In this document: one piece after another, positions 4,012-60,685 of the stretch
How the letters are laid out: every line of letters starts with the position of its first letter
Numbering within the stretch: the stretch's first letter is position 1
Source of the DNA: Paraphysomonas bandaiensis
Lineage: Eukaryota > Protista > Chrysophyceae
Reading direction: 5' to 3'
Length of the DNA stretch: 64,000 bases
Assembly (NCBI GenBank): GCA_965644295.1
Contig: CBFFRP010000242.1
Location: 124,001-188,000 of the forward strand
The notes under the pieces: generated by a model
What the model was told of the DNA's origin: nothing
The model's database searches: none
Seen by the model: the letters and a program-made list of their open reading frames with translations, nothing else
Program-made: the position numbers and the translations under genes

Positions 4012-7000
4012 CTAGATTTTCGCGGTTGCAGTGACTTTTGTGGTCGTGATCAAGCAATTGGAGTCTGTGTGACTGCAAAATTGACCAGACCCCATCGCAT
4101 TCCTAGCTAACACGCGAATGTAGTACACACGACCAGGAGTCAGATTCTGTATGGTGTAAGAAGACCCTGTCGTTGTGTGCTTTCCAGAGTCGAACCCCTT
4201 GAAGTCTGCACGCTCATTGTACTCAATCAAGTACTCAGTTATCGGAGTGCCACCATTTGATACAGGCAAACCACCTCCTATAGCAGTTGGGCAGTCATCG
4301 GGTTCTTCCGCGGTACCAGAGCATGGAATCTGATGCCACGGGACGCGCGGACGCTGCCAAGTAACATAAATTTGTCCACTTGATGCACCACTTGTAGCGG
4401 CAATGGTGTGAGGCTTACCGGGAATCTGCAAACCTGGTTTGGCGAAGTTCGGCACAGCATTAGCAGCAACACTTGGCCCAGCAGAATTAACGGCAAACAC
4501 TCGAACATAGTAAGTACGCCCCTCTGTCAAATAAGGGATAGTATAGGAATTAAATTCCGTTGCGTCTAATGTCACAGAATCTTTGTGCGGTTTAGATACC
4601 ACTCCGTTAAACCCTGGTGTAGTATCCCACTCCACAATATAGCTTTCCACCGCATCGCCCCCATCATTTTCCGGTAGACCAAACGAAACAGTCAACATCG
4701 AGTTAGAAGTGACAGCCAAGACCACGTTGGTTGGCGCACTGCTGGCTTCATACGGTTGGAGCGAGGACGGTGTACTAGAGGCAGCTGCACCATAACCTTG
4801 AGAGTTGTAAGCCATCACTCGCACAAAAACAAAGACACCTTGTTCAAGATCTGTAATAGTTTTGAAAAATGGTGCACCACCTTCCAAATACGTCACAGAG
4901 GTTGTCTTCGAATCGCTAAAATCACTGTTTACTGAATACTCAATCAAATATTCAGTAATCGTGTCCCCCCCATCACTATCTGGTGGATTAAATGTCACAC
5001 GTAAATCACACTTTGAGACTGTAGTCAATACAACAGAAGTTGGAGGTCCGGGAACAACCATTGGCTTCTGAGCAGAGGGGGCAACTTGAGGTAAACTAAA
5101 ACCAATTGAATTGTATGCGAAGACGCGGGCAAAATAATACTCTCCAAGTGTGAGGGCCTTATCATCAGGAACAACATGGGTTCCTATGCATTCGTCAAAA
5201 GACTCACCATCAACAAGTTGAGAAACTGTCAAACTTGCAGTAGCACCAGATTCAGTCCGCATGTTGTTTTCATAAACAGCGAGGGTGAAATCAAATGGAT
5301 TAGATGGTGAATTGTCCAAGAAGGAAACTCTCCAGGTGTAGCCATTTGTGGCATCTGGTTCGTCTCTGTCCACCTCAACACCAAGGACGATGGCTTCCGT
5401 CAAGAATTCTAACTTACTCTCTATCGAGCCAGAATTCTTCCTACGCGATAAACTGCAAAGCTCGCTATCAATACAAGCAACTCTTGAAGATGCCACAGTC
5501 CCTCTTCCACCAGAATAACGCAGGACCGTGGCTGTTGCAAGCGAAGAAGGACCATCATTGGGAAGGAATATATCACTGTCAAGTACAATACTGGTAGATC
5601 CATTCACGCTAACAACGTTAAATATCTGATCAGGGTACTGTTGCGACGACAATCGCACTCTGTCGTTCACGAAAAGAAGCTCACCAACATCAACACTGGG
5701 GACCAACGTGTCAGATCCATTGGTAATTGCTACCGTGAATCCAGAAAGTGTGGTCATAAATCCTACCTCGTCCGCTTTCGTTGCCGTCGCATCATAGGGA
5801 ATGAAGTCAGTAAAGTAATCGCGATTGTTAACAGAAAGAGAGAGTCTGAAGTTACCTTCAATAATAGGATCATCCACTAAACCAGCCGAATTGATCTGAT
5901 ATACCGTATGAATATTAGACGATTCACACATAATTTCATTGTAGATAGCAGTGGAGAAGTCTTCAACATTATCCAATTCCACACGGTACTTCAGAATCTC
6001 AGCGCCTCCATCAGACACAGGCGGGTTGTAGGACACTTCTAACGTACTTGCAGAACCGAAATTCACATCTACGGAAACATCTGTTGGAGGTTGAGGCTTT
6101 TGCTTTGGAGGTGTGGCGGAGAGTTCTGCCGGTTTTGTTGTTGGTCCAATTCCATAAGCATTTATGGCAGAAACAGAAACAAAATACTCTGTCCCAGGAA
6201 CAAGGTTCTCAATCACAAACGATCTATCATCCTTATCAACAATGCGCGCGTTGTACCCAGCTGGCATCTCACCAGGGAAAGCATCAGATACCTTGAAACC
6301 TGTAACATCAATAGAGTTGTCACCATCCGCAATAGTGGCAGTCACTTCAGTCGCACTGGTTACAAGATAGGTGTCGTCAACATAGATGGCAGGCATGTTA
6401 CCAATGTCACCAGTGAAAGTAATTTTCCACTCATAACCAGCATACGATGTTGACATATCCGTCACATTAACAAGTTCCTTTGTAACTGAAATCTGTCTGA
6501 TGGTGGAGAGCTGCTCCAATGCTCGTTCCATGACTTCTTCTGAGCAATCAGCAGGTAGGTAATGGGTGAACACCTCAGTTCCATTAAAAGCTAGACGGAA
6601 AAATCCATCCAACTTGTCCACATCATTGTCACCAACCGAAAGTATAGTTAAAACTTGAATTTCAGAAAATCCACCCACTCGACTTCCACTCTGCATCTCG
6701 ATGATATCAATATACTCCCCAGAATCTGCAATAGGTGTACCTAAGAATGGAACCATATCACCCTCGTTGAAATCCGACTCGAATGTAACTCTCCATTGGT
6801 ATCCCTTTCCAGGTAACAGTTCGCGAGTTACGGATACATCTCCAACGACGAAGTCATTTCCATCGTCACCAAAGTAGCCTATGTTGATTAATTCGGCTCT
6901 GAGATTAGCAGCCTTAATATTGTAAGGAAGTAGCCCAGTGACTCCACCAGAATCAGAAGTTGGTCCAAAGTTCAAAAGGAATGATCCGTTGACTGTTGGA

Positions 7001-10000: not shown

Positions 10001-13000
10001 CCGACAGTCATATCGTTATTGAGAGTTGCCACAGTCATAGTGGCATCATTAGTCAGAGAGACAAGAGGAGAACAGGTAACCAACTCGAGTTCCTGCACAT
10101 TTCCAGCAACTAGGTTCCCAACAAATGACACAGTCCAACCATACCCGAAATTAGAAGAATACCCTCCTGCTCCGGACCTGATAACATCAACATCATCAAT
10201 ACTGTCAAGATCCTCCAAAGCATTTTCCACAGTTTCAGCAGAGGAATCGAAGTCTAGACACACCGTGGTCTCATTCAACAATACAAAAGAGTCGTTGTAG
10301 TAGAAATACATGAGCTTAAAAGATCCAGATGACACAATGCTCCCAGATTGCAACCTAACAGTTTGAATCTCAGGGAAACGGACAGAGAAATTTCCCACAA
10401 CGGTCTCTGTCTCAGGGGTAGTCAACACAATCTGTTGGGTTTCAGCGAAAGGAGTTGCGGCTGTGGTAACGGTCTGAATCTCATCCACATGAGTGGCGGC
10501 CACCACAACTTCTTGCACTTCATCAACAAAAGGAACAGCGAAGGCCAAAAAGCTCTCCTCGTAGGTAACCTTGCTGTAAGGAATGGCACTATCCTGGGCA
10601 GAAAACGCTGTCTCAGAATTATCGCTGCTGTAGCCATGATAAGTTCCACGGGTATATGCATCTACTCGAATACCATACTCGATACCCGTGAGTAGATCAT
10701 GGAGCTGATGGTCAAGAGGATGGACACCTGTAACGACGTTATCGTACACAGACATAGTAGTGCCTTCAGATAAATATTTAGTGGCTGATGCAGACATAGC
10801 TGGAATATCTCCTAAGTTGGTATCAAACGTAATGGCCCAGTAATTACCGTTCACCTTATAAATTGGTGCACGTTCAATGGATGAACCTTTGTAAGTGGTT
10901 GAAACGCCGGCATCATCTTTCCTAGCTAGTGGAATATAGAACCGCGACAACTTAGTATGTTCAGCTCCATCCAACACATGTTCCATATCGATAAGACTGG
11001 AGAAATCGTAAGGATCGTCCAACATACAGCCGTTTGAATCATTGTATGATATTAAGAAGTCGTTGATATTCGCAGCAAATGTTTCTGATTCCCAGTATAT
11101 CGAATATACATAACCTCCAGCATTGTTGATCAAATCTTGACCACGAGTTACAGTCAAGCAGGCGTCGGGAGTTGAGCATAGGCCAGCAGCCACGTCGGCA
11201 AGCGCGGCTTCCACCTCATAATCATAGGAGTCCCAGTTAACACAAGTGGACGACCCGATTGACGTTCCATTAATTACAAAAGAAAACGACAGGACACTCT
11301 TGCCCAATGATGCAGGATTCCGGGTACTCAATTTGAATATCTCAACTGTCTGCTCTTCCACACGATACTGAAGAGGAGTCTTATACGCTTCGGCATAGCC
11401 GTTCGATTCTCTCAAATAACCACTGTCAGCTGTGTACGGTATATCACGAGGAGTTCCACTGCGAGGAGTGTAAACTGTAATAGAAGCGGAATCAGGGAGT
11501 ACATTGTCAACAGAAACGCCAGCAAACGTCCAAGAAGAACCCACTGCATGGCCGTTGGCACTATCAAATGTAACAGACACACCATCCCTCAAGTAAACAG
11601 ATACACCTGCAGTAATATTCTGTGGGTCTTGAACGGCAGGGAAATTCTTAGTCCACCACACGAAAGCGTCGTAACCGTGAGAAAAGATTATCGATACAGT
11701 GAATACGTCGTCACCCACAGCCGTATTGTTATAAAATCCAGAAACTTTAAGATCATTGTTCGATGTGGACGAGTTAGCTGAATAGTACAAGGGCTGAGAT
11801 ATGTCACCGTCATACAGAACTTGTAACTCCGCCATGTTTCCCTTTAACGGGGCCACAAAGGAAATGTAATACAAGAAGCCATACCCTTCCTCCTTAGAAC
11901 CACTCCCGGAAGCAGTAACAGAAACGTAGTTCGCTGTGGGGTCCAATCCAAATGCATCAGCAACAATAGAATTGATAACAGTCTGAAAATGAGATGTATT
12001 CTTTTCCCACGACAGTGCAGCGCTCACAGTTGTGTTACTACCATCGAATACAAACTTGAACACATCTCCATTGGACCTACCAACAGCTTCTGATGAATAG
12101 AATAGAACCGTTTGGGTTTCCAAGCCATCACCATCAACAATTGTATCAACATCAAGAGACCACCTCATACCATTAAATTGAGATAAACTTTCGTTACATC
12201 GTGCAGCAACTATGGCATCAACGTTAGCAAGGTGTGGTCCAACGAAGAAAACGTCATAGTAGTAGGAATCTTCACCCTCTTGCTTTACCTCAACAGAGAA
12301 GTCAGGAATGCCACCTTCAAGCAGATAAACATCGAGGAGTGTTCCATTATATCCCACAGCAACATCAATAGTATCATCCAAAGTAATTTCCGTATCGCTG
12401 TCTCCAGTCTGCGCACCAATCACTACAAAAGTCTTTAAAGGAGTCGTAGAACCAGGAACCCGAATGCGATCACCAATCTGCAAGCTGCCAAGAGTAGACG
12501 CAGTTGTATACACCACATTACTGCCGGGGAGAGATATGTTCAACTGTAATGTATCGAGAGCAGTTTCCACACCATTGAAATCTGAGCACCCACCATAAGA
12601 ACCCTCATCGATTACACGGAAGGACGGTAGAGAGCGGCCAAGGGAATCACTTCTACCAAAAGTTAATTCTGGGCCATTAAACTTAAACGTGTACTGATAA
12701 CCATAGCCAGATGTCACAGTACCGTCACCAGTACGTCGAATTGTAACGTGATCATCATCATTTGCACCACCATCACTATTGAAATCGATCGAAAGAGCGT
12801 CAAACGCCTCCTGCATTTCCGACGCAGTAGCATGATAACTAATACAATCAGTGATATATTCCGAACCCTCGAAAGAAACCATGAGTTTGTAATACCCTCC
12901 CGAACCTTCCATTATTGCTGCATCAGCCGTGGAAGTCAACGAAAGCACGGTTGCCGTAGAATTTCCAGTACCGTACCGCGACGCTATAGCACTTAAGTCG

Positions 13001-16000
13001 TGCTTCACAAACATATCAATTCCAGTATCTCCAACAGTGACATCAATAGCTTCCTGGACGGAGAATAAACTCCCACTATCAATGCTTGTTACCGTATACT
13101 CTAAATCAGACCCATCAAGGATGATCACATCGCCCACCTCGATAATACCAAAGATACTCGATGAGGTCGAAACTTGCTCAGTTGACAAAATCGTAGCGGT
13201 AGGTGGAAGCTGGTGTTGGTATAATGCGGGCAGGTCATTCAACATGTCTTGCACATTGGACCCTTCCGCTCCCCACTCAATACAATCGGTTGTGCTATCG
13301 ATAAGAAGTGAACCAGAAGATGCGGTGATAGTAAAGAAACCACCGTCGATATAGCCAGATTCCACATTGGTACGAACACGTTGTACTTCAGTGTAGCCAC
13401 CTTCAACTCGAGTGACCACAGTTACAGTTCCTTCAATCGTATCAGATGGACAGGCGGAAGCAGTAAGTTCAACAACATTACCAACCACGGACTCCCCGTT
13501 AAAGTATATAGAGAAAACATAGCTCTCCCTTGATATACTCACAAGACGCGTAACCATTACGTCACCTTCCCCGACAGATTCCATACTGTCGAAGAAAGCT
13601 TCCATTTCATTCGCGGCGGTCATTTCGCCAGATAAGGGACGGGAGATACAATCAGTGCTTTCAACATAGCCACCGTGGGTAAAAGTCAACACAAAGTTTC
13701 CACACTCAGCAGTGGCATTAGCACAATCAACAGACACAACCTGAACCTCAACACCAGTCTTCAGTAATTCGTAATTATCCGCCCCTATGCGAAGTTGCTC
13801 TTGAGGAAGAAGAAGAGCAGCAGATTCAGATTCAACAGTCAACATTGGACTTCCAGACGTAACACCCACAAGACTATAGAACTCAGCTCCGTCAATAGAT
13901 TGCAAACTATTTTCCGCATCTACGTCACCTAGACCTAAGCCACCAACGCGGAATAAATCTCCAGGTGAGATGAATTGACGAATATCAGGAGGACACTGGT
14001 CAATATCTCCACACACTGCCTCTGTGGAATCATACTCGACGACCAGTACATTGGCATCCCTATCCGCACGGACAAATAATCCATCCACCTTTTCCATTAA
14101 CCTAAACTCACCAGTGGTTGCGACTTCACCAATGCTGGACAGCGATTCCAACAAATACTTCGCTTCCAATGGCTGCTGGTTATACCGAATAGGTTCTGTG
14201 GTGACACCATCAAAGGTCAGAGTAAACGTACCATCGATAGGAGTAGACCCCTCGGCGTAATTCACAGTTTCCACCGTACTATCAGTACCTTGAAGGTCGT
14301 CTGCATCAAAAGTAACAGTGATAGGATCAATATTACCAGATCCAGGAGGGAAAGAGAACCCGGCGTAAGTGCCAGGATTACTCAAAAAGAACACTTGCCA
14401 CTCATACCCACCACGAGTTCCGTCTTCAACCAACACATCACCCCAACCACCACTTTTTGCTGTGGGGTACTCAGATCGTGAAACATGAACAGCGCCAACA
14501 GTTGTCATTTCTTCAAATTTACGTTTCATCCTAGATGAGGACTCGTCATACGCAACAAGTCTACTTCCAGTAGGAGAATGTAAATCTATTGTGTATGTGC
14601 CACCAAGCCCTTCTGATCCCTTGACGAGTTCATAAACATGAGGGGCATACCGAACATTGTCCGTCGCATTCTCCTGGACAACAACGAGGGTAGGAATATC
14701 ACCAGCACCGGGAGGGGTATTTCCAGGATTGTTGACGAAACGGATTTCATACTCAACAACACCATACTTTCCAATAACTTGCCGTGTGACATTTACGACA
14801 TGATCACTTACACTCTCTAGATAACTCTTAAACGACGTGTTAGTGTAGTCATTAGATCCCTCAGGAGGGGCATTCCAGAGAAGATCTGAAGTGGAGTATG
14901 TCTCGCCGTCAACATAAAGCACAGAAAACCGGCCACGTTGAACCACACCATGCTGCACTCCTGCTTCTTCCGCAGTCATTCCATATCGTTCCCCTTCAGC
15001 AACAGTAACAATAGTTGACGTCCAATTAACGTTATCAGAGGCACCCAGTTTGCAGTTTGTAATATTTAACCCTCCTGGTGTCCCAGGATTGGGTATATCA
15101 CCTTCGTCGAAAAAGTACAACGTAATAACCTGACCATTTGCAGCAGAAACAGTATCTGAAGAAACTGTGACGTCAACACCACGAGATGGAGCATTGAGAG
15201 CAGAAATGTTGTTATGCAAGTATTCTTCAATCACTTCAGCTGGAGAATTCATCCAAATACAATCAGTAGAGTCTCCCATCAACGAAAGAATATACGATTC
15301 GGAATTCATGTCAGTGTCGTGCAGAACATCATGAATGAAAATTCGCTGTACTTCTTTAGATCCTGATGGCTCATCAGTGGCAGCATTATCACCGTCGAGA
15401 ATTGTAACTCTAGTACAGTCATAAGTGTTCACGTCATTCGACAGGCAATTTCCTCGCAAAGAAGACTCATCGTACTCTAATTTCGGTACATCGCCCGGAG
15501 AGTTACAGAGGTTGTAAATGCTATCCTTCTGTTCACATTGATCACCCCACTGACCACCAGGTGAGTCCTTGTCGCGCAAAAACGTAATACTCCACGTATA
15601 ACCTCCGTTCTTTACATTAACATCAGATCTGGACACCTCAACATCACCAATATTTGCCATATCCTCTAATATTTCCTCCATGGAGGTACCATCACCACCA
15701 GAATCAGTAGCAGTGGCAGGTGCATTATGTGCTATATTAGCAGATGTGATAGAATCCTGAATGTTAATTACAAGATGATCAGTTGTGTTGAGCATAAGGT
15801 TGAAAGTTCCGTGCAAAGGAGCAGTTCCAGGAACAACCTCCTCTACTGAGCAACCATCTGTAGGCATAGCACCATTGGTAGTGTATAATGATGACGCAGT
15901 ACAAGATATCATATCCTGGTTCCCGACATTCTTTCCCCATGCCTTCGAATACCCACTATCCCAAACTGCATCCCATGTCGTTCCAGATCCAACCCAGTTT

Positions 16001-19000
16001 CCAGGAACAAAGTCACTGTCATGAGTAATTGTAGGATCAGCCCATTGATTAGATGCAAAAGTGATCGACCACACATAGCCGAACACTTGGGTAGATGGAG
16101 TGGTCATTGGACCATCTCGAGTAACAATAACCTCAGACGGTGAGATAGAAGCAAGGCTATTTAATTTCTTCTGCACTTCAATTGCCTCAGCATCATATGG
16201 GATCGCACCAGTACTATAGCCACCGAATACAAGCTGGAAGGCTCCTTGAACTTGAGAACCTTTCCTGTATTCTTCCACGTTCACACCTGCATTTACGACA
16301 TAGGAGCCGACATTGCATTCAGAGCTGTCTACACACAACTCACCGACTCCTAGATCTGAGGCAGCAGTCGAGGTTTTCGTGATGGAAGTTGTGACCGCTT
16401 TAAACATATTTGTGTCGCCACCAACGGTTTCACCAGTGAATTCAACAGAGTACGTGTAGCCCATGACATTGTTTGGCTCCGCAGAGCGAGTAACATCAAA
16501 CAAATCCTCATTTCCAAACATGGTGTACAAAATGTTTTCAAACTCTGATGCATTCAATGCCTCGCCAGTAATTGGACTTACAACAGGAAACGCAGTAGAT
16601 CCCGATGATATGGTGGCGCCACTATGGTCAACCCAAGAAAGCCCAAAAGAACCTCCAACTTGATTGCCCTCAATAGCGGTTCCAGGATCATCAAGATTCA
16701 GAGGGTCATTCTGGGTACCAATAGAAACGACTGGAACATACGTGACATTACTAGAATTCAATGCGTTGACCACTCCCATTGGGGGAATGTCGCCATTTCT
16801 GGAAACAAAGGTTATAGTCCACACATAACCACCAGTCCACCTATTGTAACCTGAAGGAATATACACTGAACGGACAACCTCCACATCACCAAATGTATTG
16901 TTCGCACTTGAAAGGACATTGGCAAGACTATCAGCATCAATATTCCATGGAACCATATCAGCGGTGTCAACGACAGGTACACCGTTGTATGCATGTGGAA
17001 ACGTTAGATTCAATTGATAGGTGCCATCTAAAAACGAGCCCGGTTGAGCAGTACTCACTATACAGCTAACATCATTGTTAGAATTAGTCGAGTTCAAATT
17101 AGAGACGTCACAAGTCATTTCGTTCAAATCACCGTGCTGTTTGTGAAAAGTAATACTCCAAATATAACCGACTGTATCAGAACTGGAGTCGTAATAACGA
17201 CGGCTGACTTCAATAGAATCGGAATCATCATTGATTACATCGGACAGCCCTCTAAGCTTAGTGACAATTTCATTAGATGTAGCAGCTTCATCAATACTGA
17301 AAGTCGGGTTCACTCGGAGAGCGTTACACGCTTCACTGACACCATCGAATTCCTCAGGATCAGAATAGAAAAAACCAACCTCGGCATCAGTTGTTTCGAA
17401 ATCATCAGAGCTGTATCTCGGACTAATCGTTGCGTTGTTATCAGAAGATTCTAATGCAATAATCTGGTGGTATGAGTTCTGAATACGAATGAACTGAAAT
17501 AGCTCTAAATTACCGTCGACAGACACAACCCTTGTGCCCTCATCGGATACATTGACCGACACAGGAACAGTGCGAGACTCACACTCATACTCAAGGTAAA
17601 ACACACCATCAGGCTGGTTGCCTTCCACAAGAGTATGCGCAACATTGCCCTCGCTGCGAACATCTCCAATCGTAACATCAAAATTTGCATCCGAATACTG
17701 TGTCAAGTACGTCGGCGATCCACTAGTGTAAACAACACTAGAATCATACACTTCCAACGCTGGAACGTTTCCGCGTGTATAATCACTTACAAAAGTAACG
17801 TTGAAAGCATGCAAATAGATTCCATTTGTCCCAACATCGAGCACATACGCAACTTTTTGAACAACAACGCATTTGCCACTACCATCCGTCATAAAGCTCG
17901 CGCCAGTTCCAGACAAGGAACACAACTCACTTTCAATTGCAGACACACTATCTGTCAGCGATATGTCATTCGTCATACACGTAGTATCTGAACACGAGTA
18001 GCCCGTAACACCAGCATCATCCAAGGCGATCGTACACCAGTTCGTATCAGAGTTGTCAACATCCGTACCACATTTATAAGGTTCAAACTGGAGCTTAAAT
18101 GTACCACTTATGTTAGCCTCTACAGCCGGACAAGGGTCACCTAACGCACACCCTGAAGTATCTGCCCCTGATACTATAATTCCAAAGATTTGCACTTCGT
18201 TAACCCGAGGTGTTGAAACCTCAACAACCTGAATTTCAGGTACATCCTCGACATATGTTTGTACGAGCTGCACTTCAGCAACGTGAGTGCCAGTCAACTC
18301 AATAGTCTGCACTTCATTTACGTCAACTGCTGTGGTCGTAACCCTCTGTACCTCATTCGTAACATCATCACAATGAGTTGTAACAGTCTGGATTTCATCC
18401 TTCTGGTTGACACGGGTACGAATTATTTGGCGCTCATTTGTCACTTCGGCAGTCATGCGAATGGCCTGAACTTCCATATCAACATCTGATGCCGCAACAA
18501 CTGTCTGGACTTCAGACACAACTGGAAGGTCAACGACGTCATAAAAGGCAAAATCAGCTTCATTTGAATACATCAACCTATATTTCTCCAAGGTGGCGCC
18601 ACCGTCACGTACAGGATAGTCCCACGAGGCGAACAGAGAAGTGCTGCTGATAACATCTAAAGTGACATTCTCAGGGGCACCAGGAAGCTGATCAACTGTC
18701 GTAACTCCACACACCGCTTTGCAAACGCAGCAAGCTTCATCTGCAGTTTTCCCGACACTTCTTTCTCCAATCTTGTCAGCATTGTCTACAGCCCCACAGC
18801 CGCAATTTTCGCCACTACTACACTCACCTTTGCGTGCGTCTAACATAAAAGCATAATCAGCGCATGTGTTGCCATTGAAATCTTCCCAGCTGTCAACATC
18901 AATAAAAGCATACCCAGCGACACCTGCCCCCTTACTATTGAACGCAGTGACGCGGATGAAGTACTCTCGCCCCGGCAAAAGTACAGTTTCTTCTACTCCA

Positions 19001-43000: not shown

Positions 43001-46000
43001 CAGGTAACTTTAAAGGACGCATTATTCTGGGCGTGATAATAGATAATTTCAATGGCGTTTAAGTTGTCAGCTTCTAACTCTACTGTAAACTTCATCGATT
43101 CAGCACCTAATGGCACGGAGTTCACAAGCTTAACACCGTTGATAGATAATTCAGCACCAAAATCAGAATGAACTGTAAATGTGTAAGCGCCAGATGCTGG
43201 AGATGAAACATAACCAGACCACTTTACACTGAAGTAATCATTAGGAAACTTTCCACTGTACAGCTCATCATAAGGGAGGGCGGAATACATTCCCCAATCG
43301 AACTCTATAGTTTTATCCAGTCTTGTGGAATCACATCCACATTCGGCAATAGTTAAATCACAGAAAGTAATGTCCCCAAAATACCATGATGTAGAGTAGT
43401 TTCCAAGGCGCAGGCCATCACACCAATATGGGTCATGATACACTCCATCGTGCAAGTGGGATAGTGATGCCAGTACAGGATCGGAAAGGTCAGAATTCTT
43501 GTAATATGTTGCCAGCAATCCACCACGAGTTATGAGCTTCAATGAAATATCGTACGATCCAGCGGCAGTAGGATCGTAAACCATGGTATAAATTCCATCA
43601 GTATACGGCTCCCTGTTCAAAACTTCGATGTCAATCGACACTTCTCTGCGTCCAATATCTGCATCTGACTGACACTCATCAACAGTTCCTTTCATGGTCA
43701 TCACAAATTGGCTGTCTCCATCCAGAGGTCCATCAAGCTCATTACCAAATCGATCACGCAGCTGAATGGTGAAGTACTCTCTCACGCCCTCCCTATTGAC
43801 GCGTGATATGTTATGCGTGGTAGTGGCTGAATACTCTAACGCAGGAGAAACAAATACACCATCAACGAGGTCATTTGCCACATCCACATTTTCAATTGTA
43901 ACAAATACATCGTAGTTTCCCTTTATGGTAGGTGTATACACTATTTTATACAGGCCAAGTTTTCCTTCCACAGGTTCAATTGAATCAACCCCTTCAACAA
44001 TAGGATGAATTTCAACCACCATCGATTCGTTCGGGCTAACAACAGAAACAACATGCATTGTAGGCAATGCATGCTCTGGCCGTACAAAAGTTATATTAGA
44101 CCAAGCACCGTCACTGGAGCATATCGCAGTCGCACTCCCCGTCACGTTTACAGCATAAGACTCATCAAGTCCGTGACTTAACGCATTTTCCAACTGAAGT
44201 GGAGTGATAGATGCATCGATAACAACGGTATCATTCAAGAACTCAAGAGTGATAACACCGCTATCTCCACCAGCACAATAAAATCCCTGAACCTCTTTCA
44301 TTCCAATATGATGATTTTCAGTGCGATGATTCAATGAGATTGCAATGCTGTTCAAGTCATCGTAGTTCAATCGGTTGTTGCCCTCATAGCCCTTCAAAGA
44401 TTCTATGATAGATACAGTAGGTCTACTTTGATGGTGAATAGGACTTTCCACAAACATCAAATTGTCAGTTACAGCTCTCAGGAGGGGCTCATCCCCAAGA
44501 GACGACGGACAATTTCCAGATGCTACGCCGTCAACATTCTCCGAGCACTCTGCATCAAAGAATACAGTCCATGTTGAAAACAAATCCACTGGAATGTCAT
44601 AAAAAGCAGTACCATCAGCAGCTAGAGGAATGCCGACACCATTTTTTACTACATTAATATTTCCAATCGAATATAATGCTTCTAGAGCACTCTCAACTTC
44701 CTCTGCAGAAGCATCAAATGATATGTCTACAGTTGTTTCACCCTTAAACTCCAGATTGAATGTACCCCAAAGAGGATATACTCCTTGCAGGGTACCCATA
44801 TCTTCACTCAATTCAACAGATAAAGATGACACAGGGAGCGTTGACGAGGCAACAACTATATCAGGAACATTACCCTTATAGTAGTTGAATTGGACATACA
44901 CCGTTGCGTTGTGATTACATATCGAGGACAGGTCTCCGTCAGAACGAGTGATTGTCACATCTGCGACATTGGCAAATGCATTTTCAGCTTCTGCTAAGGT
45001 GGAATCAAAGTCAATTGTGGTGGTCTCTACGCCACCAACAGAAAGCCTGAAGTCACCAGAGGAGGCCGAACAAAGAAGTGCTTGTACCTCTTGCCTGAAA
45101 GGCGCATCGCCAGGTGTATATTCTGTTACTCCAGCTACGCCTGAATCAGAAGACACCATCATAGGAAGGTTTCCGTTCAACGACAAGAATGTTACCCTCA
45201 ATGGTGTGGCGGCAGTTAAGGTACCAGTAACGGGTTCGTCATTCTGATCAGTAATACTAACCATACCAATTGTCGTCAAATTTGTGAGCGCAGACTCTAA
45301 CTGGGCAACAGTAGTAGTCCCCACCGTCATCACTGATGTAGTCTGTCCGCGAAATGTCAATGTAAAACTACCACCAGTACCTACGAAGGTCAATTCCTGA
45401 ACTTCTTGAACAAATTCGGTCACAAATGCAGATGTGATGATGTTCTGAATCTCAGTCTGCCGGGTGTCTTTCGCTTGGATATACACCTCAACTGGCTCAC
45501 CAGCTACTCCTCCAGCCAACCCGGACCCATACGTTAAAGAAGCCGTCGGATCCACAGGAGCATTGGAAACAAAAATAGTGGTAGGACTACCAGATATGTC
45601 CACACCATTATTGGTGATACGAACTGTATATGTACCAGTGTGCCAAAGGGTAAAGGACACAGGGTACACACCTCTCTCTGCCGGGCGAGAAATCGACAGC
45701 TCATCGAAGAATGACGTATCACCAGTTGAGGGAGCAACCAATGTCAATTGGTTTCCAGTTGGTTCACCAGAAGGGGGGCGAGATTGCCAAACATTAAGCA
45801 TGCTAAGGAATTGAACCTTCCAAGTATATCCCTCGTCAATGAGTTCAACAACAACGTCCAACTGAAAATCATGAAGAGACTCAAGAATAACTTCAAGACC
45901 ATGTGCAGTAACGTTGGATGAAATATCCGCCGTAGTCTTGCCACCAAATGACAGTCTAAAGTATCCACTTGTCGACCTCGATGCAGCCGTAATATAGTCA

Positions 46001-49000
46001 ATCGCAGTCGACCTTCTATAATAGTCGTTGGATTCATGTTGCGTAAACTCGACAACGAAATAATCGGATTCACCATTCCCATAACCTATAAAGTGAGATG
46101 TATTATCACCCATTCGAAGGTTACCAAATTCATCTCTTGCAGAAATAGTAAACGAATTCTCTATTCCTGTAACGGCATAAGCAAGGGCCATATCTTCACC
46201 ATCATCATAAGTCGAGCTCGGGGCATGCAGATCATTGTGCACCACAGTCAAAATAGGATTGTCTAACGAACAAAAACTAGGATGACGATAAGATTTTATT
46301 CCATCATACACGCGGTCGAATATATAGGGTGCCGAAGCACTCTTACAAGTTTGAAGTGGTTCAGCAATACCATCGCTCGATTCAAGCGTGACAGCAACAT
46401 CGTAATTCCCAGCAATAGGAATAGTGTAGTGTACAGTGTATGTACCATCACCATGGTCGTCAACATTTCCGATGTATTGAATTTCAGGATTGCTTATAAG
46501 AGTAAAAATCGCACGGAAGTCATCACCGCCAATAATTTGGTTGTTACCATACGCATCTTTTGCTTGAATATAAAAATATCCGAATTCGCCAGTGACCGCC
46601 TCCAAAAGGTAATCCATTTGCTCGAATGACGGACTCTCAACTTCAGAAAGTGAAGGCACAGTTGGACCAGGATTAACAGTAAGATGGAACGGAGAGCACT
46701 TATTGTCTTCACCCCGACCACAATATATGTCGCGCCCACCCATTTGAACAAAAATCTGGTAAGGACCAGAGGCTAATGGTAGGTATGAAGCCTTAAACAA
46801 ACCTCCACCCATGTAATCTAAGTCCGCATAGTACACGGTGTTGCCAGCAGCGGCGCCATCGATTCTCACAGACAATAGATCAGCAGGATCTACCTCTTCA
46901 AAGTCAGTAGTTTTATTGTTTCCCTTCGAATCTTTAGTTTGAATGAAGAAATGGGTTGGAGTACCAGTAATTGCGAGTGCAAGTGAATCACCGTAAGCGT
47001 CAGTATATGGATACTCTGCAGCACCAGGAACAACAGTTGTACCAAAAGGGCTTCCAGAAATATCACTGGCATAGTAAAACTGGGATGCAGGAATTACTTG
47101 TTTTCGAATGGTTGTCGACGAATAGCTTAACTGAATAGACGCAGCACCTGTGATTTCACGATACTCGATTGCGATATCGTAGTAAGTACCCATCTCAAGG
47201 TCAAGCATTACTCTGTTTTCAACACAACAAGCATCCCACATATCAATAACTAATTCGTGATCGATATAGAGTCTGGCGCCGTCATCGGCATACAAATAGA
47301 AAGACACAACTTCTGACTTAGGCACACGAATTTTTCCAGCCCATTTAATGCTAACATAGTCGTATGAGTCGTGGGTTAATAGTCCAGTTGACCAATCAAA
47401 ATTTATGACTGGGTCTATACGTTCGATACTTGGTTGCCCATAGAACCATTGGTTATCAAAGTACGACGCCGCCAAACCTCCACTTAGGAGCTGTACAACC
47501 TTAACATCATACTTTCCAGGGATATCAACGATGTATTGGCCGGTATAATCAGGGTTTCCTGGAATCTTTTCCATTGCTGCTAAACGGGGATTCGATCCCG
47601 TCAACGTATCTCCATTGCCCGCAACAATTTCTTCAACATACACGGACGCATCAGATCCTAGCAGACGCTCTGCAGATACCCCTAAATTCTCAGTATCGCC
47701 AATCAGTGACCTGTACGTTATGAGCCACGAAAATCGTCCGTTTGAGTATCCAGTTCGGCTGACTTCCACATCACCAACAGAAGGCAACGATTCCAAGGCC
47801 GAGTCCAATTCTTCTGCCGTGCTATCGTACGGAACAGCGACAGTATCGTTACCAAAGTATAATATGATATCGCCATATAATGGAGTCGGGGCGCCACCTT
47901 CAGTCCACAATCTCTGGATCTCATATCTGTAATCACTAGGTTCCATCATCCGAAGATTTCCTACATTCTGAGTAAAAGTAACTGTCCACTTGAATCCATT
48001 GCCTTGATTTTCTCTGGAAACCTGAACACGACCAACACCAGAAAGATCTTCAAGAGCGTCCTTCATGCTGGCAGCACTGGCATCGAAATCAATATCAGCT
48101 GTGTACTCATCCTCAAAGAATATAGTAAAAGTTCCGTAAATTGGACTCACTCCTTTTATAGCTTCAACAACTGTTACATTTGCCCCTGTCGTGGAATCAA
48201 TAACCATATGGTTGACGTCACCAACGGGAGAGGTGAACCGAACGGTATAGGAAACAACTGTATCCCCGCCATACAGCAATTCAGCGGACTTGGATACATC
48301 AGCCAACACAGGAGCTCCATCAGGACCGATTAAATTATTGATAGCACCGGCTACATCCTCGGCAGACGCATTGTAAGGCAAGTACGTAGTATTCTCTAAA
48401 GAACTGAACAAGTTGATACTAAATTCCCCACTTGTGTCGTATGAAATAGTAATAATTTGCTCCTCATTAACAAACTCCTCATCTGCAGCAACAGTAATGG
48501 TCTGCACTTCGGTGACACCTTTCTGTACCTCGCTAATAAGGACACGATCATTTAATGTCGACATATCCGGGACATCACCAAGGTTCGCAACGAAAGTGAT
48601 CATAAACAAAGTTCCATCGTCAGTTTCCTCTTTGGAAACATCAACACTGTCAACATTAGGTAGACTTTCAACAGCAACCTGAACAAGGTACGCAGTGGAA
48701 GTAGAGTTGAACGCAAGTGTCTCGTATTCAAGGGTTGATTCAGGAGTAAGGTAGTCAAGTAAAAACAAAGAAGCGTTCTCTGAGTTTCCGGAAGGGAAGA
48801 ACACACTCACGACTTCATAAACCACCGGGTTATATGTAGCCACCCCTTGATCACGGTACCATTCGCCATTGCTGTATGTCTCAGTGAAAAATTGGTCCAA
48901 CCCAGCAAATCCAGCAGCTGTAGACACCTCTCGCAATACTGAACCGGAAGCTTTCTTTGGCTCAATAGTAAATTGATTGCGGTTGCCTTTCAAAAACTCT

Positions 49001-52000
49001 GACACACTGACATTGCAATTAGCATTGAGTGAGAGCGGAACGATATCAGCTACGTCACCAGAGTCGAAAATGGTTACACGCCAGTACGTTATGTCTTGGG
49101 AGGCATTGACATCAACAGTGCGCTGCACATCAACTGCACCCATCATCAAGCTATTGACGAGCACAGCTTCGAACTCGTTAGCCGTATAGTTGTTCCAAAC
49201 AGTGGCCCAATTATCTGATCCCCAGTACAGACGAAAGACAGCATCGCTACAGCCAACAGCTGTGATAATCTGCTGCTCGTCAACATCATCCGTAATGCCA
49301 ATAGTTAATGAGGAGCCAGACGCCGTTGTGTAGGCCGCACTTGAACCAGAGGTTGCTATCACGGTTGGAGAAGCTCCACTGAGAACACCATCACCGAGTG
49401 CATTAAGGGGTGCCACCTTAAAGGAGTAAGACATATCCGGCACAAGGTGAGTTATGGTGGCTGCTCTTACATCCGGAATACCAGTGCCATCATAAACAAG
49501 GACAGCATCAGAACCTGCCTGCTCCTCCGTAACCCTGATGGAAACGTGGGAGCTAAGAGGAGTAAGACGACCGGGGGTAGCATATAGCATTGGTAAATCA
49601 CCAGCAGCAGCGTCAAACGTGATAATCCACTGATAGGCACCTCTATCCTCACCATTGATCAGATTCTCTACTCGCTCAACAGTAACATACCAAATACCAG
49701 GAAGATCTTCCAGACTGACTTTCATTTCTTCGGCACTAACATTATATGGCATATCAATAGTCATGGCACCATTGTAGGATAGAGTGAATGATCCGCGGAT
49801 AGGACTTGTGAGCTTCTGCAGTACTTGCACAGATGCCACAACTGGGTGGTCAGGATCAGCAGCAAAAGCACCATTCGAATTTTCAAGATTAGAAATGTCA
49901 ATTACAATTAAATCCAGTTCTTCAGAAAACATGCCGAAATCGATTGTCCAAGACCGAGTTAGAGAGCCACCTTCAGTCTCAACGATAACTGAAACGTTTG
50001 CGTCATCAAAGCCAGCAGAACTCAGCACAGATTCCACTGCGAGCGCAACTTCCGCCTGTGTTGCCACATAAGACAAGTCTTCTGAAGGTATTCCAAACAA
50101 AGAAAGGGTAAAATATCCACTGGTTGCGTTTGTCACAGTAACCTTTTGAATTTCAGCGACTCGTTCGTCCACAGAGGTTGTGACCATTTGAATTTCTTTA
50201 TGCACTGGGTTTGGATTGGCAAGGGTGTTGAGACCAACGCCGGGAAACATATACACTTTGTAACCAGTAATTGGAGTACCACCAGTGCTGTTGTAGGCAG
50301 GCATCGGCCAATTCAGACTAATTTCACTAGCTTCGATGGAAGTCATACGCGGTTGGACATGTTGGTAGGTGTTATTAGCGAAAGCATCAACGCCTGCAAC
50401 AATACCTGCCACAACAGACAAAATTGGACTACTCGCCGAACGACCAATTGCGTTGACAGCGACAACGTAGAATCTATATATATCGCCCTCGTTTAGGCCG
50501 CCAACGGTGTACTCCATGACCAGGTCTCCAGATGCTTCGTCGACGATAGGAATAAGAGTTGAAAGAGAAACTTCAGTGTATGTGCTGCTCCCAGGTTGAG
50601 AGTAGTAAAGTAAGTAACGTGTGATCTCCGATCCCCCGTTATCAACTGGCGCTAGCCACCGAACTGTAATCGCTGTATCCCCATATACTTGGGATCCAAT
50701 ATTCGATTTCGCATGACGGTATGGCATCGGCGGGGCGAGCGGTACACGAGGGCTTCGAACTGCGAAGACGGCCGGTTCACTGAATGCACCATAACAAGCT
50801 TTGGTATTGTCGGTGGCTTTGCAGTAGTTCATTGCTCGCACAAAAAACTGGTAGCTTTTTCCCGGTTCAACACCAAGTGAGGTCGATGCTTTAATGACAA
50901 ATGACGTAGTGGGGTTATCTGTACCGTCAAACACTAAACGACGATTACCGCTTGCCCAGTCGTCCATCCAGAGCTCAAACCCCATCACAGTCGCGCCTCC
51001 ATTCTCTCTCGGATAATCCCACTCGACTTCGATAGAAGTAGCTGTACTTTCAACTAGGCGAACACGTGGCGGAGCTCCAGGCGGATTGTTCGTGGGAATC
51101 TCGAACTCAGGAGTAGTCAGAGCAGAAAACCCATAGCCTTGCAAATTGTGTGCAAAGACACGAACGTAGTACGCATTCCCAGATATCAAGTTATCCATGG
51201 TGTACACATATGGTGCAGATCCTGACAGATCAGTGACAATATCTTGACATAGACCACTGGCACTACCCTCACAGACATCAGGCCCGACACCTCGCAGAAT
51301 TTGCTCAGTGGCAAGCATATCTGCAGTACTTGTGTTGTACCCTGTGATTCCTAATTCAGGTACATCACCAACAGCACACACATCAACACCATCCACAATT
51401 TTGCAGCCGTCGAATGTGATAAGCCATATATACCCATTTTGCTTTTTTGTTCTAGCTACTGACACTGTCCCAATAGAATTTAATTCATTTAAAAACTTTT
51501 CCATTTCACTGGCCGACGCATCGACTGGAATGGCATCGGTTACTTCACTGAATGTTCCATTAGAGTACGAGAGCGTAAAATCACCATCCAGAAGAACCGA
51601 TCCAACCTCTACCTCGGTAACATTGACAAAAGTTGAATTACCAAGTAAGTTTGTAGTGTCTGGAGTTAACATTTCCAAGTCACCAGCACCAACTGGGAAC
51701 GCACCGGGCATTGAATTGAAGGTAACGCTCCATGAGTATTCATTTTGCACAGATGGGCCAGTTCTTGATACAGTAACAGTTCCAATGTTGGGAAGAGCTT
51801 CCAAGCGGGTCTTCAGTACGGTTTCGGCTACATTATAATCAATAGGATCCGTGGTATGACCGCGGAAGGTTAATGCAAAAGTACCAGTGATTTCATTTCC
51901 CCGTACAGATCCCTCGGGAGCAGACCCTCGGTCAGTAAGAGATTCCATACCATTCGTCAGAACAGAGATTGTGACATCTGTACCTGTCAGACGATTAAAA

Positions 52001-55000
52001 TAACTCTCAACCTTGAGATCTTCTACATCGCCCCCTAGATCAGCATGTGAAAATGTTACGCGCCACTGAACGTCGTGAGCACTAACAAGATCAGATGAGT
52101 CAACGAGCTCAACAGTAACACCATTAGAAGGAATGGTATCGAGGGCAATCAGAGCTTCCTCGAGCTCAGCAGCTGTTGCTGTACCAGAAATATCCTCAGA
52201 AACAGAACCACGGAAAGAAAGACGGAAATATCCACCGATTCCAGCATCGCCAGCTGTAGACTCCGTTATATCAATTCGGCGAAGGCCTTGTAGATTATTG
52301 GTGTAACCATTCATGAGAGGTAAATCACCAGACATATCCACGACATCATCAAACGACACTTCGAATCCACTACCAGCGGGGTAGTCGGCATCAAGGAAGC
52401 AGGCAGTAGTAATTCCATTAATATATGTGACGGTCACACTGTTGATGATTGCGATATCCTGAAGGGCCCTCTTAACATCATCGGCTGTGGCACTCGCCAA
52501 AATGGTAGACGAATAGTAGCCGTTGAACTCTAATCTGAAACTACCTCCAGTGGCATCGCACTTGATATGTTGTACTTCTGTGGCACTAGTACCCCCAAAT
52601 CCAGTAGAAATGTAAACCAGCTGAATTTCAGGAATCACTTCAGTTGAAGACGTTATCACCTGTACTTCATTAACTACAGAACTGAGAACACTGACTTGTT
52701 GGATTTCTTGAGCAAAGGCCGCACTACCATATTCAACTCTATAGAAGGTAACATCATCCCCACCATCGAGAAGCGGCGGACTAAAGGCAACCTCCATCGA
52801 GGTTCCGTCTATCACTTCAAGTGTGGGGTCAGTGGGACGACCAGGACGCTGGGGTTCCGGAATAGCGTAAGGCACATCAGCAAAGGCGAATGGACCCTGA
52901 CCAACTGAGTTGATAGCTGATACACGGAAGTAATATGCGATGCCTTCTTCAAGATCACTTACAGTCAAAGACAGGTCACTCAAATCCGTAACTATTGCGC
53001 TTCCTAATGGAAGACCATTACTGAGGTCCAGACTATCGAATGGCGGTGCAACACCAACACGATCCACGGCAACAACACCAGATGCCACGGTTCCAGTCAA
53101 GTCTAAACCATCCAAGACAATCATATCGACGTCACCTAACTCAGTGAGAAATGTAACAGTCCAGGTAAACCCACCATTTTCATCAGCCATCGATCGCTCA
53201 ACTACGACATCTCCTATGGTATCCAACGCCTCCAACGCTCTTTCAACCTGTCTAGCACTCGAATCAAATGGAATATAAATCGACCGATCGTTACGGAAGG
53301 ACAACGCAAAATAACCACCAAGAGCCTCGCTGGTGCTCGCACGTACTTGCGAAGTTGAGATGGTGACATAATCTCCCACATTGGTGTTATTTTCATCAAC
53401 GACATATGCATCAAGTAATGGAAGTTCTCCGGCGTTAGTATCAAAAGTTACAGTCCACACACATTCACCGTTAGCAGACATATCACTGGCTGACACAGTT
53501 ACAGTTCCAACTGTATCAAGTAGTTCGAGCTGAGCTTTGATGGCATCTTTCTCACCATTCACTAATGTCCCTGTCGAAACAGTATCGTGTCCCGCAACAG
53601 ATGAGGTACCTATGCTTCCTGTAGAATCGGTAACAGTATTCTTGGACTGCACAGTTAGCTGTTGGAGATCTCCTATGGTGCTGATGAAATCGACAGTCCA
53701 AATGCACCCCTGTGTTATGCCTGTAGTAACAGATGTCACTAAAACATCATCAAAATAAGATAGTAACTCCAGTTCATCTTCAATACTAGCCGCAGCCAAG
53801 GTGCAATCACCATTAGCGCTTGGGTTTGCTTCAATCCAACCAGTAACCTCATCCACATACTTCAATCGAAAAGTGAGGTACTGTGATACTTCGTAATCAC
53901 CACCGGAAGTTGTAGTGTCAATGGTTGAGGAAGTGATGGTTTGAACTTCAGTCACCGCAGATACACAGCTTGAATTAGATGGCAGAAGAGGAATGGTTGA
54001 GGTGTTGTGCTCTCCGTAGTTCAGGAAAAAAGAAGTTGTTTCATTAATATGAGAGGATGCTGACACCGTTATTCTCTGAATTTCCTTCCAAGTACCCTTT
54101 CGTACTTCAACAACATCAACGCGGGAATTCAGACCATTCAAATTCGAAGTGTCGGAACTAAATGCAGAGAGGTCCCCTTCATGAGTGCGGTTGTAGTCAG
54201 CAAGAAACTCAACTGTCCAAGTGTAGGCGAGTTCACCATCTGGTCCACTGCGAGAGACTGATATAGTTCCCGTGGGTATGGTATCAAGATCCTCCAGAAA
54301 AGCCTTCATGTCGGAGGCGGTAGTATTGAAGGGGATGTCCTCGGTTGTGAGCCCGTTGTATGTAAGAGTAAACGATCCAGAAAGTTCATTACCATCTACA
54401 GAAGTAATGTTAACTCCAGGCACCCCACCAGTTGACGTGACAGTTAACCCACTGTAATCTGCTGTGAGCATCTCTACATCACCATCGTTCATATCGGATG
54501 TGAATTCAATCGTCCACTCGTACCCATGCTGATTGTCGACAGCTGACCGAGTTACCTCCACAGACCCGATAGTGCTCAGTGCCTCCAGTTTCTCTCTCAT
54601 CTCTGCCTCAGATGCGTCGTAGTCAATATCACCTGTGGTCTTTTCCTCAAAGGTCAAGCGAAACGTTCCTCCAAGAATATTTCCATCTGTGACCGTTTTG
54701 ACCTGGGCATCGGCGGACCCAAACGGCGTGAGCTGCGCGGTATGAACACGCATCTGAGGTACATCGCCCATGGAAAGGGGAAATACCACTACATACTCAT
54801 ACTCAGTCGAGTCGATAATATTATGAGTAACCTCAACATTCCCAAAAGGAGCAACGTTGTTTAGCTCATTAATGATATCCTCAACAGATTCACGAGAACC
54901 AGAGGCTGGGTAATTGACCTCTATGTACCCTGAATATTGTAGACTGCCACCAGTTGCAGTGGTATCGAGTTCAAGGAAAAAGTAGCCATTGGTAGCATCA

Positions 55001-55435
55001 GTAACTGTGATAACTTGAACCTCATTAACTGGGGTGGCAAAAGTCTTCACAACTTGAACTTCGTTGACATCATCAGCATAAGTAGAAATTGATTGAATTT
55101 CGTTAGGTCCAATGTAGTTGGATGTCGTAATGGTTTGAATTTCCGAGGAACCAGGGTCCGTATCCCACTCAACCTATTAAAAAATTAGCCATTTAATTCA
55201 TAATGATGACCTTGTTATACCTTGTAGCTATGAATGGCAGAACCTCCGTCAGAGAAAGGAGAATTGAACTCAGTGAGGATGGAATCGCCACTGATAACAG
55301 TCAGGTCCAAGAACGGAGCAGATGGTACATCTAATTAAAGCAAATTTACGACTATAAATAAAAATCACAAGGTGTACCTAAACTGTTGATGATAGTTGCT
55401 GTCGCCAAACACAGCCATGAGGCAATACGAAACAT
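4012..55435 (-). CDS. Giant secreted modular protein, 17,109 aa (FN3 / filamin-like / PA14 / EVQ-repeat); exons 55435..55378, 55330..55221, 55173..4012
   Basis: The 17,012-codon ORF extends in frame to an AG acceptor at 55174-5. Two 47-nt GT-AG introns (55174..55220, 55331..55377) give MFRIASWLCLATATIINSL-DVPSAPFLDLTVISGDSILTEFNSPFSDGGSAIHSYKVEWD, a signal peptide followed by the first FN3 half. Exon lengths 58+110+51162 = 17,110 codons including stop. Repeated FN3 motifs (P.DGG..I..Y.VEW / L.PG..Y.VRV.A.N..G). Confidence 0.93.
18706..18888 (-). other. 8-cysteine module, copy 2, in the giant protein
   Basis: WEDFNGNTCADY...ECSSGENCGCG...TADEACCVCKAVCG; 34/61 aa identical to the copy at 38146..38328. 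Confidence 0.85.
38146..38328 (-). other. 8-cysteine module, copy 1, in the giant protein
   Basis: WRDSEGHDCDHY...ECTTGVLCGCG...SADEACCACKSTCG. Confidence 0.85.
39267..39700 (-). other. PA14 domain 3 in the giant protein
   Basis: GLIGNYFNN...RIDSIVDFWW...DYISIRWTGYILP...VNDGVRMWINDELIID...IKIEYRENTG...LAWSS...EVIP. Confidence 0.85.
42950..43525 (-). other. PA14 domain 2 in the giant protein (with Cys-rich insert)
   Basis: GGLLATYY...RLDKTIEFDWG...DYFSVKWSGYV.SP.SG.YTF.VHSDFG..L.ING...IEIIYY...VTWSGP. Confidence 0.8.
47075..47481 (-). other. PA14 domain 1 in the giant protein
   Basis: GGLAASYFDN...RIDPVINFDW...DYVSIKWAGKI...YADDGARLYID.ELVIDMW...YYDIAIEYRE.TG.A.IQL.YSS...KQVIP. Confidence 0.88.
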
Positions 55436-60364: not shown

Positions 60365-60685
60365 GTCAATTGTAGAGTATAGAATGAATCTCTGTATATG
60401 GGAAACGAGGAAGAGATTTCACTGTGCTTTTTACTTCGTCCTTGTTTGGTAAGGCAGAAGTTCATTGATGCATGGAAGTCTGCAGATAGCGGCAGGGAAA
60501 GTTTTTTACAGGTGTACGTACGTACAGGAGAATTATAAATACAGATGAAAACTACCGCTGACCAATCATATATGTTGTACCAAGTATTTAGGGTTATGGT
60601 TCGCTGATATTGTCACAAAGTCAAAGTGTAAGATGAGGTGATCACTTTGTAAAGGTTGCTATCACTTCATTGAGCTGCTAATAAT
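60365..60685. promoter_or_regulatory. Putative bidirectional promoter region (321 bp between divergent ATGs)
   Basis: DBR1 ATG at 60364 (-) and propeller-gene ATG at 60686 (+) are head to head; tataaat at ~60534. The regulatory role is inferred from geometry only. Confidence 0.5.

What the first reader, a model, noticed from the sequence alone, without database searches (positions are those of the whole stretch)
4012..55435. A 17,109-aa (~1.8-1.9 MDa) secreted protein whose signal peptide is hidden behind two micro-introns
Seen: the ORF track's GTG start is not the real start. Two 47-nt introns add a Met-initiated hydrophobic leader and complete FN3 domain 1. The chain is acidic, Ser/Thr/Val/Gly-rich, full of N-x-S/T sequons and paired cysteines, as expected extracellularly. 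From recall, similar oomycete and brown-algal proteins are auto-annotated 'titin-like', but this one shows no I-set Ig arrays, PEVK or kinase. Inference: an uncharacterised giant cell-surface or matrix scaffold (coat, lorica, adhesive or prey-capture fibre).
Basis: partly seen in the sequence, partly recalled or inferred. Interest (0 to 1): 0.85.

Follow-up and report, generated by a model that had tools for sequence, protein, structure and literature searches.

The report
Giant branched protein of flagellated stramenopiles
This gene makes a 17,000-residue secreted protein that is predicted to fold into a branched tree rather than a simple chain; relatives occur from water moulds to diatoms and kelp, and it is a good but untested candidate for an unidentified part of the hairy flagellum these organisms swim with.

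Summary
The gene is real, on the minus strand: three exons, 17,109 aa. Two 47-nt introns add a signal-peptide-like leader and half of FN3 domain 1; orthologs begin the same way. No RNA reads were obtainable. The introns are ordinary-sized here and sequons are at chance level.

Architecture is the main result. About 35 FN3 domains are mostly split, with about 75 copies of a ~100-aa repeat inserted, often nested. AlphaFold models (pLDDT 94-97) rebuild one FN3 from halves 500 residues apart and one repeat from parts 200 residues apart. The repeat matches the CTE-like domain of phage Bxb1 virion proteins and also occurs in mastigoneme-family proteins of this genome.

Collinear orthologs span stramenopiles; oomycetes split the gene into two secreted halves. 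The probable Phytophthora ortholog is abundant in zoospore membranes, about twice as high in flagella. A 'flagellar titin' is reported in brown algae (identity unverified). None was named from zoospore-less downy mildews (uncontrolled).

Best reading (0.55): an extracellular scaffold of the flagellar surface or hair system. It is not titin. First-stage notes on this window also saw the nesting; the findings index covers only this genome.

The parts
55378..55435 (-). Exon 1: ATG and 19-residue signal-peptide-like leader
   Evidence: 9-residue hydropathy 1.2-2.4; orthologs carry leaders at the same place
55331..55377 (-). Intron 1, 47 nt, GT..AG, phase 1, GC 0.26
   Evidence: not confirmed by reads
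55221..55330 (-). Exon 2: N-terminal half of FN3 domain 1
   Evidence: aligns with N-termini of 8 orthologs
55174..55220 (-). Intron 2, 47 nt, GT..AG, phase 0, GC 0.23
   Evidence: homology of P0001 also starts at the first exon-3 codon; not confirmed by reads
4012..55173 (-). Exon 3: 51.2-kb single exon, 17,053 aa plus stop
   Evidence: tiled end to end by overlapping collinear homologs; only one weak in-frame intron candidate
55443..55491 (-). Possible third intron (49 nt, GC 0.27) in the 5' leader; splicing would create an in-frame ATG three codons upstream
   Evidence: unverified
52879..52965 (-). C-terminal half of FN3 domain 1, about 740 residues after its N-half
51094..52851 (-). Module 1: split FN3 carrying an arm of four nested CTE-like (EVQ) domains
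39214..49056 (-). Filamin-repeat region (at least 6) with inserted PA14 and CTE-like domains
   Evidence: Pfam; motif positions
47074..47478 (-). PA14 domain 1 (possible glycan-binding tip)
   Evidence: PF07691 E 2e-21
42949..43524 (-). PA14 domain 2
   Evidence: PF07691 E 3e-15
39259..39699 (-). PA14 domain 3
   Evidence: PF07691 E 5e-22
26640..26720 (-). A/B junction (exon-3 aa about 9,490-9,510): linker between two FN3 domains where oomycetes split the gene into two secreted proteins
19576..20742 (-). Module 2: split FN3, two nested CTE-like domains, small beta-rich domain inserted in the inner one
10594..18684 (-). Long arm: one FN3 opened by about 2,650 residues, beginning with nine stacked EVQ strands
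   Evidence: pairing inferred, not modelled
4015..5061 (-). C-terminal tandem of three FN3 domains; no transmembrane or GPI-like tail

Best explanation
The gene encodes one secreted, soluble glycoprotein of about 1.85 MDa that folds as a branched scaffold. A backbone of about 35 FN3 and at least 6 filamin domains (roughly 150-200 nm if extended; my estimate) carries side arms. Each arm forms because the chain leaves a loop of a backbone domain, lays down one beta-strand per domain going out, and completes each domain coming back. Arms are stacks of CTE-like (EVQ) domains, some tipped with PA14 or small beta-rich domains. The out-and-back path staples both ends of every arm, which suits a load-bearing spacer or cross-linker. 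Its most likely site is the outer surface of the stramenopile flagellum, as an accessory part of the tripartite-hair (mastigoneme) system: hair base, link between hairs, or fine coat, held by protein or glycan contacts rather than its own membrane anchor. Shown here by computation: gene model, split-domain fold of two modules, domain homologies, distribution. Inferred: secretion, whole-molecule shape, location and role.
For: Fold. Order of strands and bodies such as (ssssBBBB), (ssBB), (sB). The repeat matches Bxb1 gp23 at E 3e-38, and gp23 itself shows a nested order. The same repeat lies in mastigoneme-family EGF proteins of this genome (41-68 bits), one of which matches the Ochromonas tubular mastigoneme chains of PDB 9UFE at E 1e-18 to 1e-24; OCM6 gives a weak hit at the equivalent position (E 0.36). 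Named orthologs come from lineages with flagellated cells: Phytophthora, Plasmopara, Pythium, Albugo, Saprolegniales, Ectocarpus, Choristocarpus, Thalassiosira, Chaetoceros, Cantina; none was named from Peronospora, Hyaloperonospora, Bremia or pennate diatoms. In P. parasitica zoospores PPTG_04587 ('Titin', 10,566 aa) has counts 181/22/359/374 against 679/557/289/504, the same direction as the three mastigoneme proteins (PMC12223298 supplement); the expected length of the Phytophthora A-half is about 10,470 aa. A 'flagellar titin' is reported as present in all brown algae (10.1101/2024.02.19.579948). SPRG_03974, the B-half ortholog, rises from 0.03 in mycelium to 6.7 in sporulating mycelium and 16.4 in cysts (PMC5771568).
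Against: No localisation exists for this protein. PPTG_04587 was matched by length, name and leader only, not by sequence; its enrichment (about 2.2-fold) has no ratio listed in the paper's table, replicates 3 and 4 show little difference, and I inferred the column order from the mastigoneme rows. The brown-algal 'flagellar titin' could not be tied to a locus. The absence in non-flagellate taxa has no positive control and most hits are unnamed. The repeat also occurs in several other giant proteins of this genome, so it is not specific to hairs. The giant was not found among the 9UFE shaft chains (one search tested one module only). Saprolegnia expression fits a cyst coat equally well. No RNA evidence from this organism.
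Confidence: 0.55

Rival explanations
1. A cell-body coat or adhesive of the motile cell and cyst: stored in vesicles, released on settling, binding glycans through PA14.
For: SPRG_03974 peaks in cysts and was proposed as a hooked-hair or adhesive candidate (PMC5771568). Three PA14 domains. The probable Phytophthora ortholog is also abundant in the cell-body fraction.
Against: Higher counts in the flagellar fraction. Conserved in centric diatoms and brown algae, which have no such cyst spines (from my knowledge). Expression already rises at sporulation. That paper offered no localisation.
Confidence: 0.25
2. A luminal template or chaperone scaffold on which hairs (or scales) are assembled in the ER or Golgi, not part of the mature surface.
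For: Leader without anchor. Hairs begin assembly in the perinuclear continuum (PMC2108286 abstract). Shared repeat with hair-family proteins.
Against: No ER-retention signal at the C-terminus. The probable ortholog is recovered with isolated flagella.
Confidence: 0.1
3. A cytoplasmic, titin-like linker between hairs and axoneme, as suggested for the brown-algal 'flagellar titin'.
For: Statement in 10.1101/2024.02.19.579948; FN3 halves resemble titin FN3.
Against: Conserved N-terminal leader on both oomycete halves and most full-length A orthologs, paired cysteines, PA14 domains, no transmembrane segment, no I-set, PEVK or kinase.
Confidence: 0.05
4. A lineage-specific structure of this organism (lorica, scale matrix, prey-capture fibre).
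Against: One copy of this gene found in the genome, with collinear orthologs across stramenopiles at 30-63% identity and a tree that broadly follows the species groups.
Confidence: 0.05
5. The locus yields two or more shorter products (separate transcripts or cleavage near the A/B junction), so no 1.85-MDa chain exists in vivo. Compatible with any role above.
For: Oomycetes encode A and B separately, B with its own leader.
Against: No stop, leader or intron at the junction here. Six other proteins and one metagenome contig run through it, including a transcript-derived protein (P0015) and a brown-algal gene model.
Confidence: 0.15

Closest known systems
Stramenopile auto-annotated 'titin' / 'similar to titin isoform N2-B' proteins (SPRG_04153, SPRG_03974, PITG_01932, Albugo CCA13958, Ectocarpus and centric diatom orthologs)
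   Same: Collinear orthologs, 30-55% identity over thousands of residues, same split FN3 modules and N-terminus.
   Different: Here one 17,109-aa chain; oomycetes have two genes (about 10,500 and 7,400 aa). I found no structural or functional study of any member.
Mycobacteriophage Bxb1 CTE-like domains (capsid, tail tube gp19, tail-tip cage gp23; PDB 9D9X, 9D93)
   Different: One to three copies in the virion proteins, about 75 here; the nesting point follows strand 1 here but falls mid-domain in gp23; eukaryotic secreted context.
Tubular mastigoneme proteins (Ocm/Mas/Sig; PDB 9UFE)
   Same: Family members in this genome carry the same repeat after their EGF head; secreted; similar distribution.
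   Different: The giant has no EGF head, is 20-80 times longer and was not found among the solved shaft chains.
Animal titin / twitchin
   Same: Giant size; FN3 domains of titin-like sequence.
   Different: Secreted leader, split FN3, no I-set Ig, PEVK or kinase; branched rather than linear.
Giant modular adhesins and coat proteins (bacterial repeat adhesins, fungal PA14 adhesins, fibrocystin-like proteins; from my knowledge)
   Same: Long secreted beta-domain arrays with lectin-like PA14 modules.
   Different: Those are tandem arrays, usually anchored; this one is recursively nested and unanchored.

Membership tests
Titin/twitchin | I-set Ig arrays | tested here: not met
   No I-set hit in Pfam scans of all of exon 3
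Titin/twitchin | Kinase domain | tested here: not met
Titin/twitchin | PEVK segment | tested here: not met
   At most 37% P+E+V+K per 100 aa
Titin/twitchin | Cytoplasmic, no signal peptide | tested here: not met
   Hydrophobic leader conserved in orthologs; SignalP not available
Stramenopile 'titin-like' FN3/PA14/filamin giants | Collinear homology over the whole length | tested here: met
Stramenopile 'titin-like' FN3/PA14/filamin giants | Leader followed by split FN3 domain 1 | tested here: met
   exon by exon
Bxb1 CTE-like domain | Fold match | tested here: met
Bxb1 CTE-like domain | Sequence-profile homology | tested here: met
   E 3e-38 to gp23, 3e-5 to capsid; PHROG 10909 and 2839
Tubular mastigoneme shaft proteins (Ocm/Mas/Sig) | Cysteine-rich EGF-like head | tested here: not met
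   No EGF hit in the giant
Tubular mastigoneme shaft proteins (Ocm/Mas/Sig) | Shared CTE-like repeat | tested here: met
   Clear in this genome's family members; weak in OCM6, E 0.36
Flagellar-hair system component | Located on the anterior flagellum | not testable with these tools
   Only indirect proteomic leads
Flagellar-hair system component | Lost with flagella | tested here: inconclusive
   No named hit from zoospore-less downy mildews in two length bands; no positive control
Membrane-anchored adhesin | Transmembrane helix or GPI signal | tested here: not met
   Highest 19-residue hydropathy 1.67; polar C-terminus

The most novel reading that the evidence does not exclude
An ancestral pan-stramenopile protein of about 17,000 residues, built by recursive domain insertion from a module shared with phage virion surfaces, forms the still unidentified base, anchor or fine-filament layer of the tripartite flagellar hair, and the same module is used in the hair-family proteins themselves.
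Probability: 0.3. Interest if true: 0.92.

Novelty: new variant of a known kind. Interest (0 to 1): 0.78.

Why it matters
It corrects a widespread mis-annotation ('titin') and gives the family a testable structure: a single chain that folds into a branched scaffold, at a scale and nesting depth I have not seen described. It links a phage virion surface domain to stramenopile hair-family proteins. The solved hair structure lists only OCM-type chains, and to my knowledge the proteins of the base and anchoring layer are unknown; this family is a concrete candidate that can be tested in Phytophthora and Ectocarpus. The oomycete fission marks a natural functional boundary in the molecule.

Tried and rejected
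The spliced, joined protein was not searched or folded; exons were tested separately. Mutual-information test of strand-to-body pairing: inconclusive, alignment too shallow. NCBIfam: no hits. Fold of the small beta-rich insert: not identified, FN3 hits filled the lists and Atlas scores were only 0.81. Fu et al. 2014 and the Bxb1 paper were not held; the brown-algal supplement did not list the titin locus. No PITG_01932 expression data found. Sequon enrichment rejected. Retained in-frame introns in exon 3 rejected as a general explanation. Assembly chimera rejected: overlapping homologs tile the chain. 18S rRNA was found but could not be classified. One PHROGs call failed on a frame slip and was corrected; two contig look-ups exceeded the length limit. 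The tree is the quick search, not the finished careful one.

Full report
Numbering: amino-acid positions count from the first codon of exon 3 (add 56 for the full protein). All structure statements come from predicted models.

1. Observation. The gene is on the minus strand. A stop-free frame runs from 55173 to 4015, 17,053 codons. Upstream lie two 47-nt GT..AG segments, 55377..55331 and 55220..55174, much poorer in GC than their flanks. Exon 1 (58 nt) and exon 2 (110 nt) keep frame and give 17,109 aa in all. Such AT-rich GT..AG pairs occur once in the 51-kb frame and three times in the 330-nt leader. Exon 2, translated alone, is the first half of an FN3 domain and aligns with the N-termini of eight orthologs, most of which have a hydrophobic leader just before it. 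Without exon 2 the FN3 C-half at aa 737 has no partner. I searched the exons separately and left the joined protein out. The introns are ordinary here: the DBR1 gene next door has 49, 53 and 62 nt introns. Sequons are at chance level; cysteine clustering is real. There is no transmembrane or GPI-like segment.

2. Domain content. Pfam finds FN3 throughout, three PA14 domains and filamin repeats, and no I-set, kinase or EGF domain. Most of the chain is a repeat with no Pfam model. Profiles built from the protein itself find about 75-80 repeat bodies, 60 first strands (EVQ motif; about 1 expected in shuffles), 34 FN3 N-halves and 31 C-halves. Repeats are only 25% identical on average, so the array is old. 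A further small beta-rich insert occurs at least 7 times.

4. What the repeat is. A profile of 29 copies matches Bxb1 gp23 at E 3e-38, the capsid at 3e-5 and the tail tube at 0.08; PHROGs, Foldseek and tblastn agree. PMC13252515 calls these CTE-like domains. In gp23 three N-halves precede the C-halves, a solved precedent for nesting, cut at a different loop. In this genome the repeat also follows the EGF head of several mastigoneme-family proteins (41-68 bits); one of them matches six chains of the Ochromonas tubular mastigoneme, PDB 9UFE, and OCM6 gives a weak hit at the equivalent place (E 0.36). It also occurs in other giant proteins of the genome. The direction of any phage-eukaryote transfer was not tested.

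5. Relatives. Collinear orthologs occur in Thalassiosira, Chaetoceros, Ectocarpus, Choristocarpus, many oomycetes, Cantina and unnamed metagenomes. Overlapping homologs tile the whole chain; the own-genome search found no second copy. In oomycetes the A half stops after an FN3 near aa 9,450 and the B half (about 7,400 aa) starts with its own leader near aa 9,510; in Pythium oligandrum unrelated genes lie upstream of B. Six other proteins and one metagenome contig run through the junction. A quick tree places the split oomycete clade among fused forms, so fission is probably derived. Two searches with the Phytophthora B half, covering 1,265-12,900 aa, named Phytophthora, Plasmopara, Pythium and Saprolegniales but no Peronospora, Hyaloperonospora or Bremia; no positive control was possible.

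6. Literature leads. SPRG_03974 is the B-half ortholog; PMC5771568 lists it as cyst-expressed and a candidate for hooked-hair bundles, without localisation. In the P. parasitica zoospore membrane proteome (PMC12223298 supplement), PPTG_04587 ('Titin', 10,566 aa) has counts about 2.2 times higher in the columns where the mastigoneme proteins are enriched, with no ratio listed. Its length fits the expected A half, about 10,470 aa, but I could not compare sequences. A brown-algal genomics preprint mentions a conserved 'flagellar titin' thought to connect mastigonemes to the axoneme; I could not obtain its locus. If it is this family, the leader argues that the link is extracellular. No paper describing the architecture was found.

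7. How it most likely works. The protein enters the ER, folds each arm as the chain returns, forms local disulfides and is exported without an anchor. A backbone of roughly 150-200 nm (my estimate from domain counts) presents stiff arms, some tipped with lectin-like PA14 domains. I think it most likely acts as a spacer or cross-linker on the flagellar surface in the hair system (0.55). Rivals: cell or cyst coat adhesive (0.25), luminal assembly scaffold (0.10), cytoplasmic linker (0.05), lineage-specific structure (0.05); separately, processing into halves (0.15).

8. Verdict. A real gene of a family that is known only by a misleading automatic name. It fails the titin membership tests and is not a shaft protein. 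The nested branched fold, the CTE-like identity of the repeat, its presence in hair-family proteins and the oomycete fission appear undescribed in the papers I could search. I had noted the nesting before seeing two first-stage notes on this window that say the same; they are not independent support. The label 'chrysophyte, Paraphysomonas' comes from unchecked notes. Novelty: new variant of a known kind. Interest 0.78.

Noticed in passing
G000:C184, minus strand, frame ending at 36490: A 13,038-aa open frame with 28 CTE-like repeats in the part fetched, an IPT/TIG-like start and a hydrophobic region near the C-terminus; orthologs in Aphanomyces stellatus (P0035) and metagenomes.
   Followed up: partly
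G000:C645:41408-68314 (-), C53:26240-36547 (+), C378, C169, C123, C352, C65, C355: Further giant open frames (1,259-8,969 aa) carrying the same repeat without FN3; the module is a general building block of this genome's large proteins.
   Followed up: partly
L009 (C272), L028 (C406), L030/L031 (C457), L033 (C94): Mastigoneme-family EGF genes that contain one or two clear CTE-like domains; a homology between hair-family proteins and a phage virion domain that I did not find described.
   Followed up: partly
PDB 9D93 gp23, residues 268-594: The phage protein shows three N-halves followed by C-halves, that is nested CTE-like domains.
   Followed up: partly
window 58544-60365 (-): DBR1 lariat debranching enzyme gene with introns at 60324..60276, 60123..60071 and 59922..59861 and a proline-rich tail.
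   Followed up: partly
window 55443-55491 (-): Third intron-like segment in the 5' leader of the giant gene; splicing would create an in-frame ATG.
   Followed up: partly
P0195/P0198 and P0197/P0025: Plasmopara halstedii and Phytophthora citrophthora each have two B-half paralogs on contigs of the same length, suggesting a duplication in Peronosporales.
   Followed up: no
P0047: A close ortholog is filed under Sphagnum balticum, probably a stramenopile contaminant in that assembly.
   Followed up: no
window 60674-63314 (+) and 63654-63977 (-): Three open frames without Pfam hits and one with a weak SAP domain hit.
   Followed up: no
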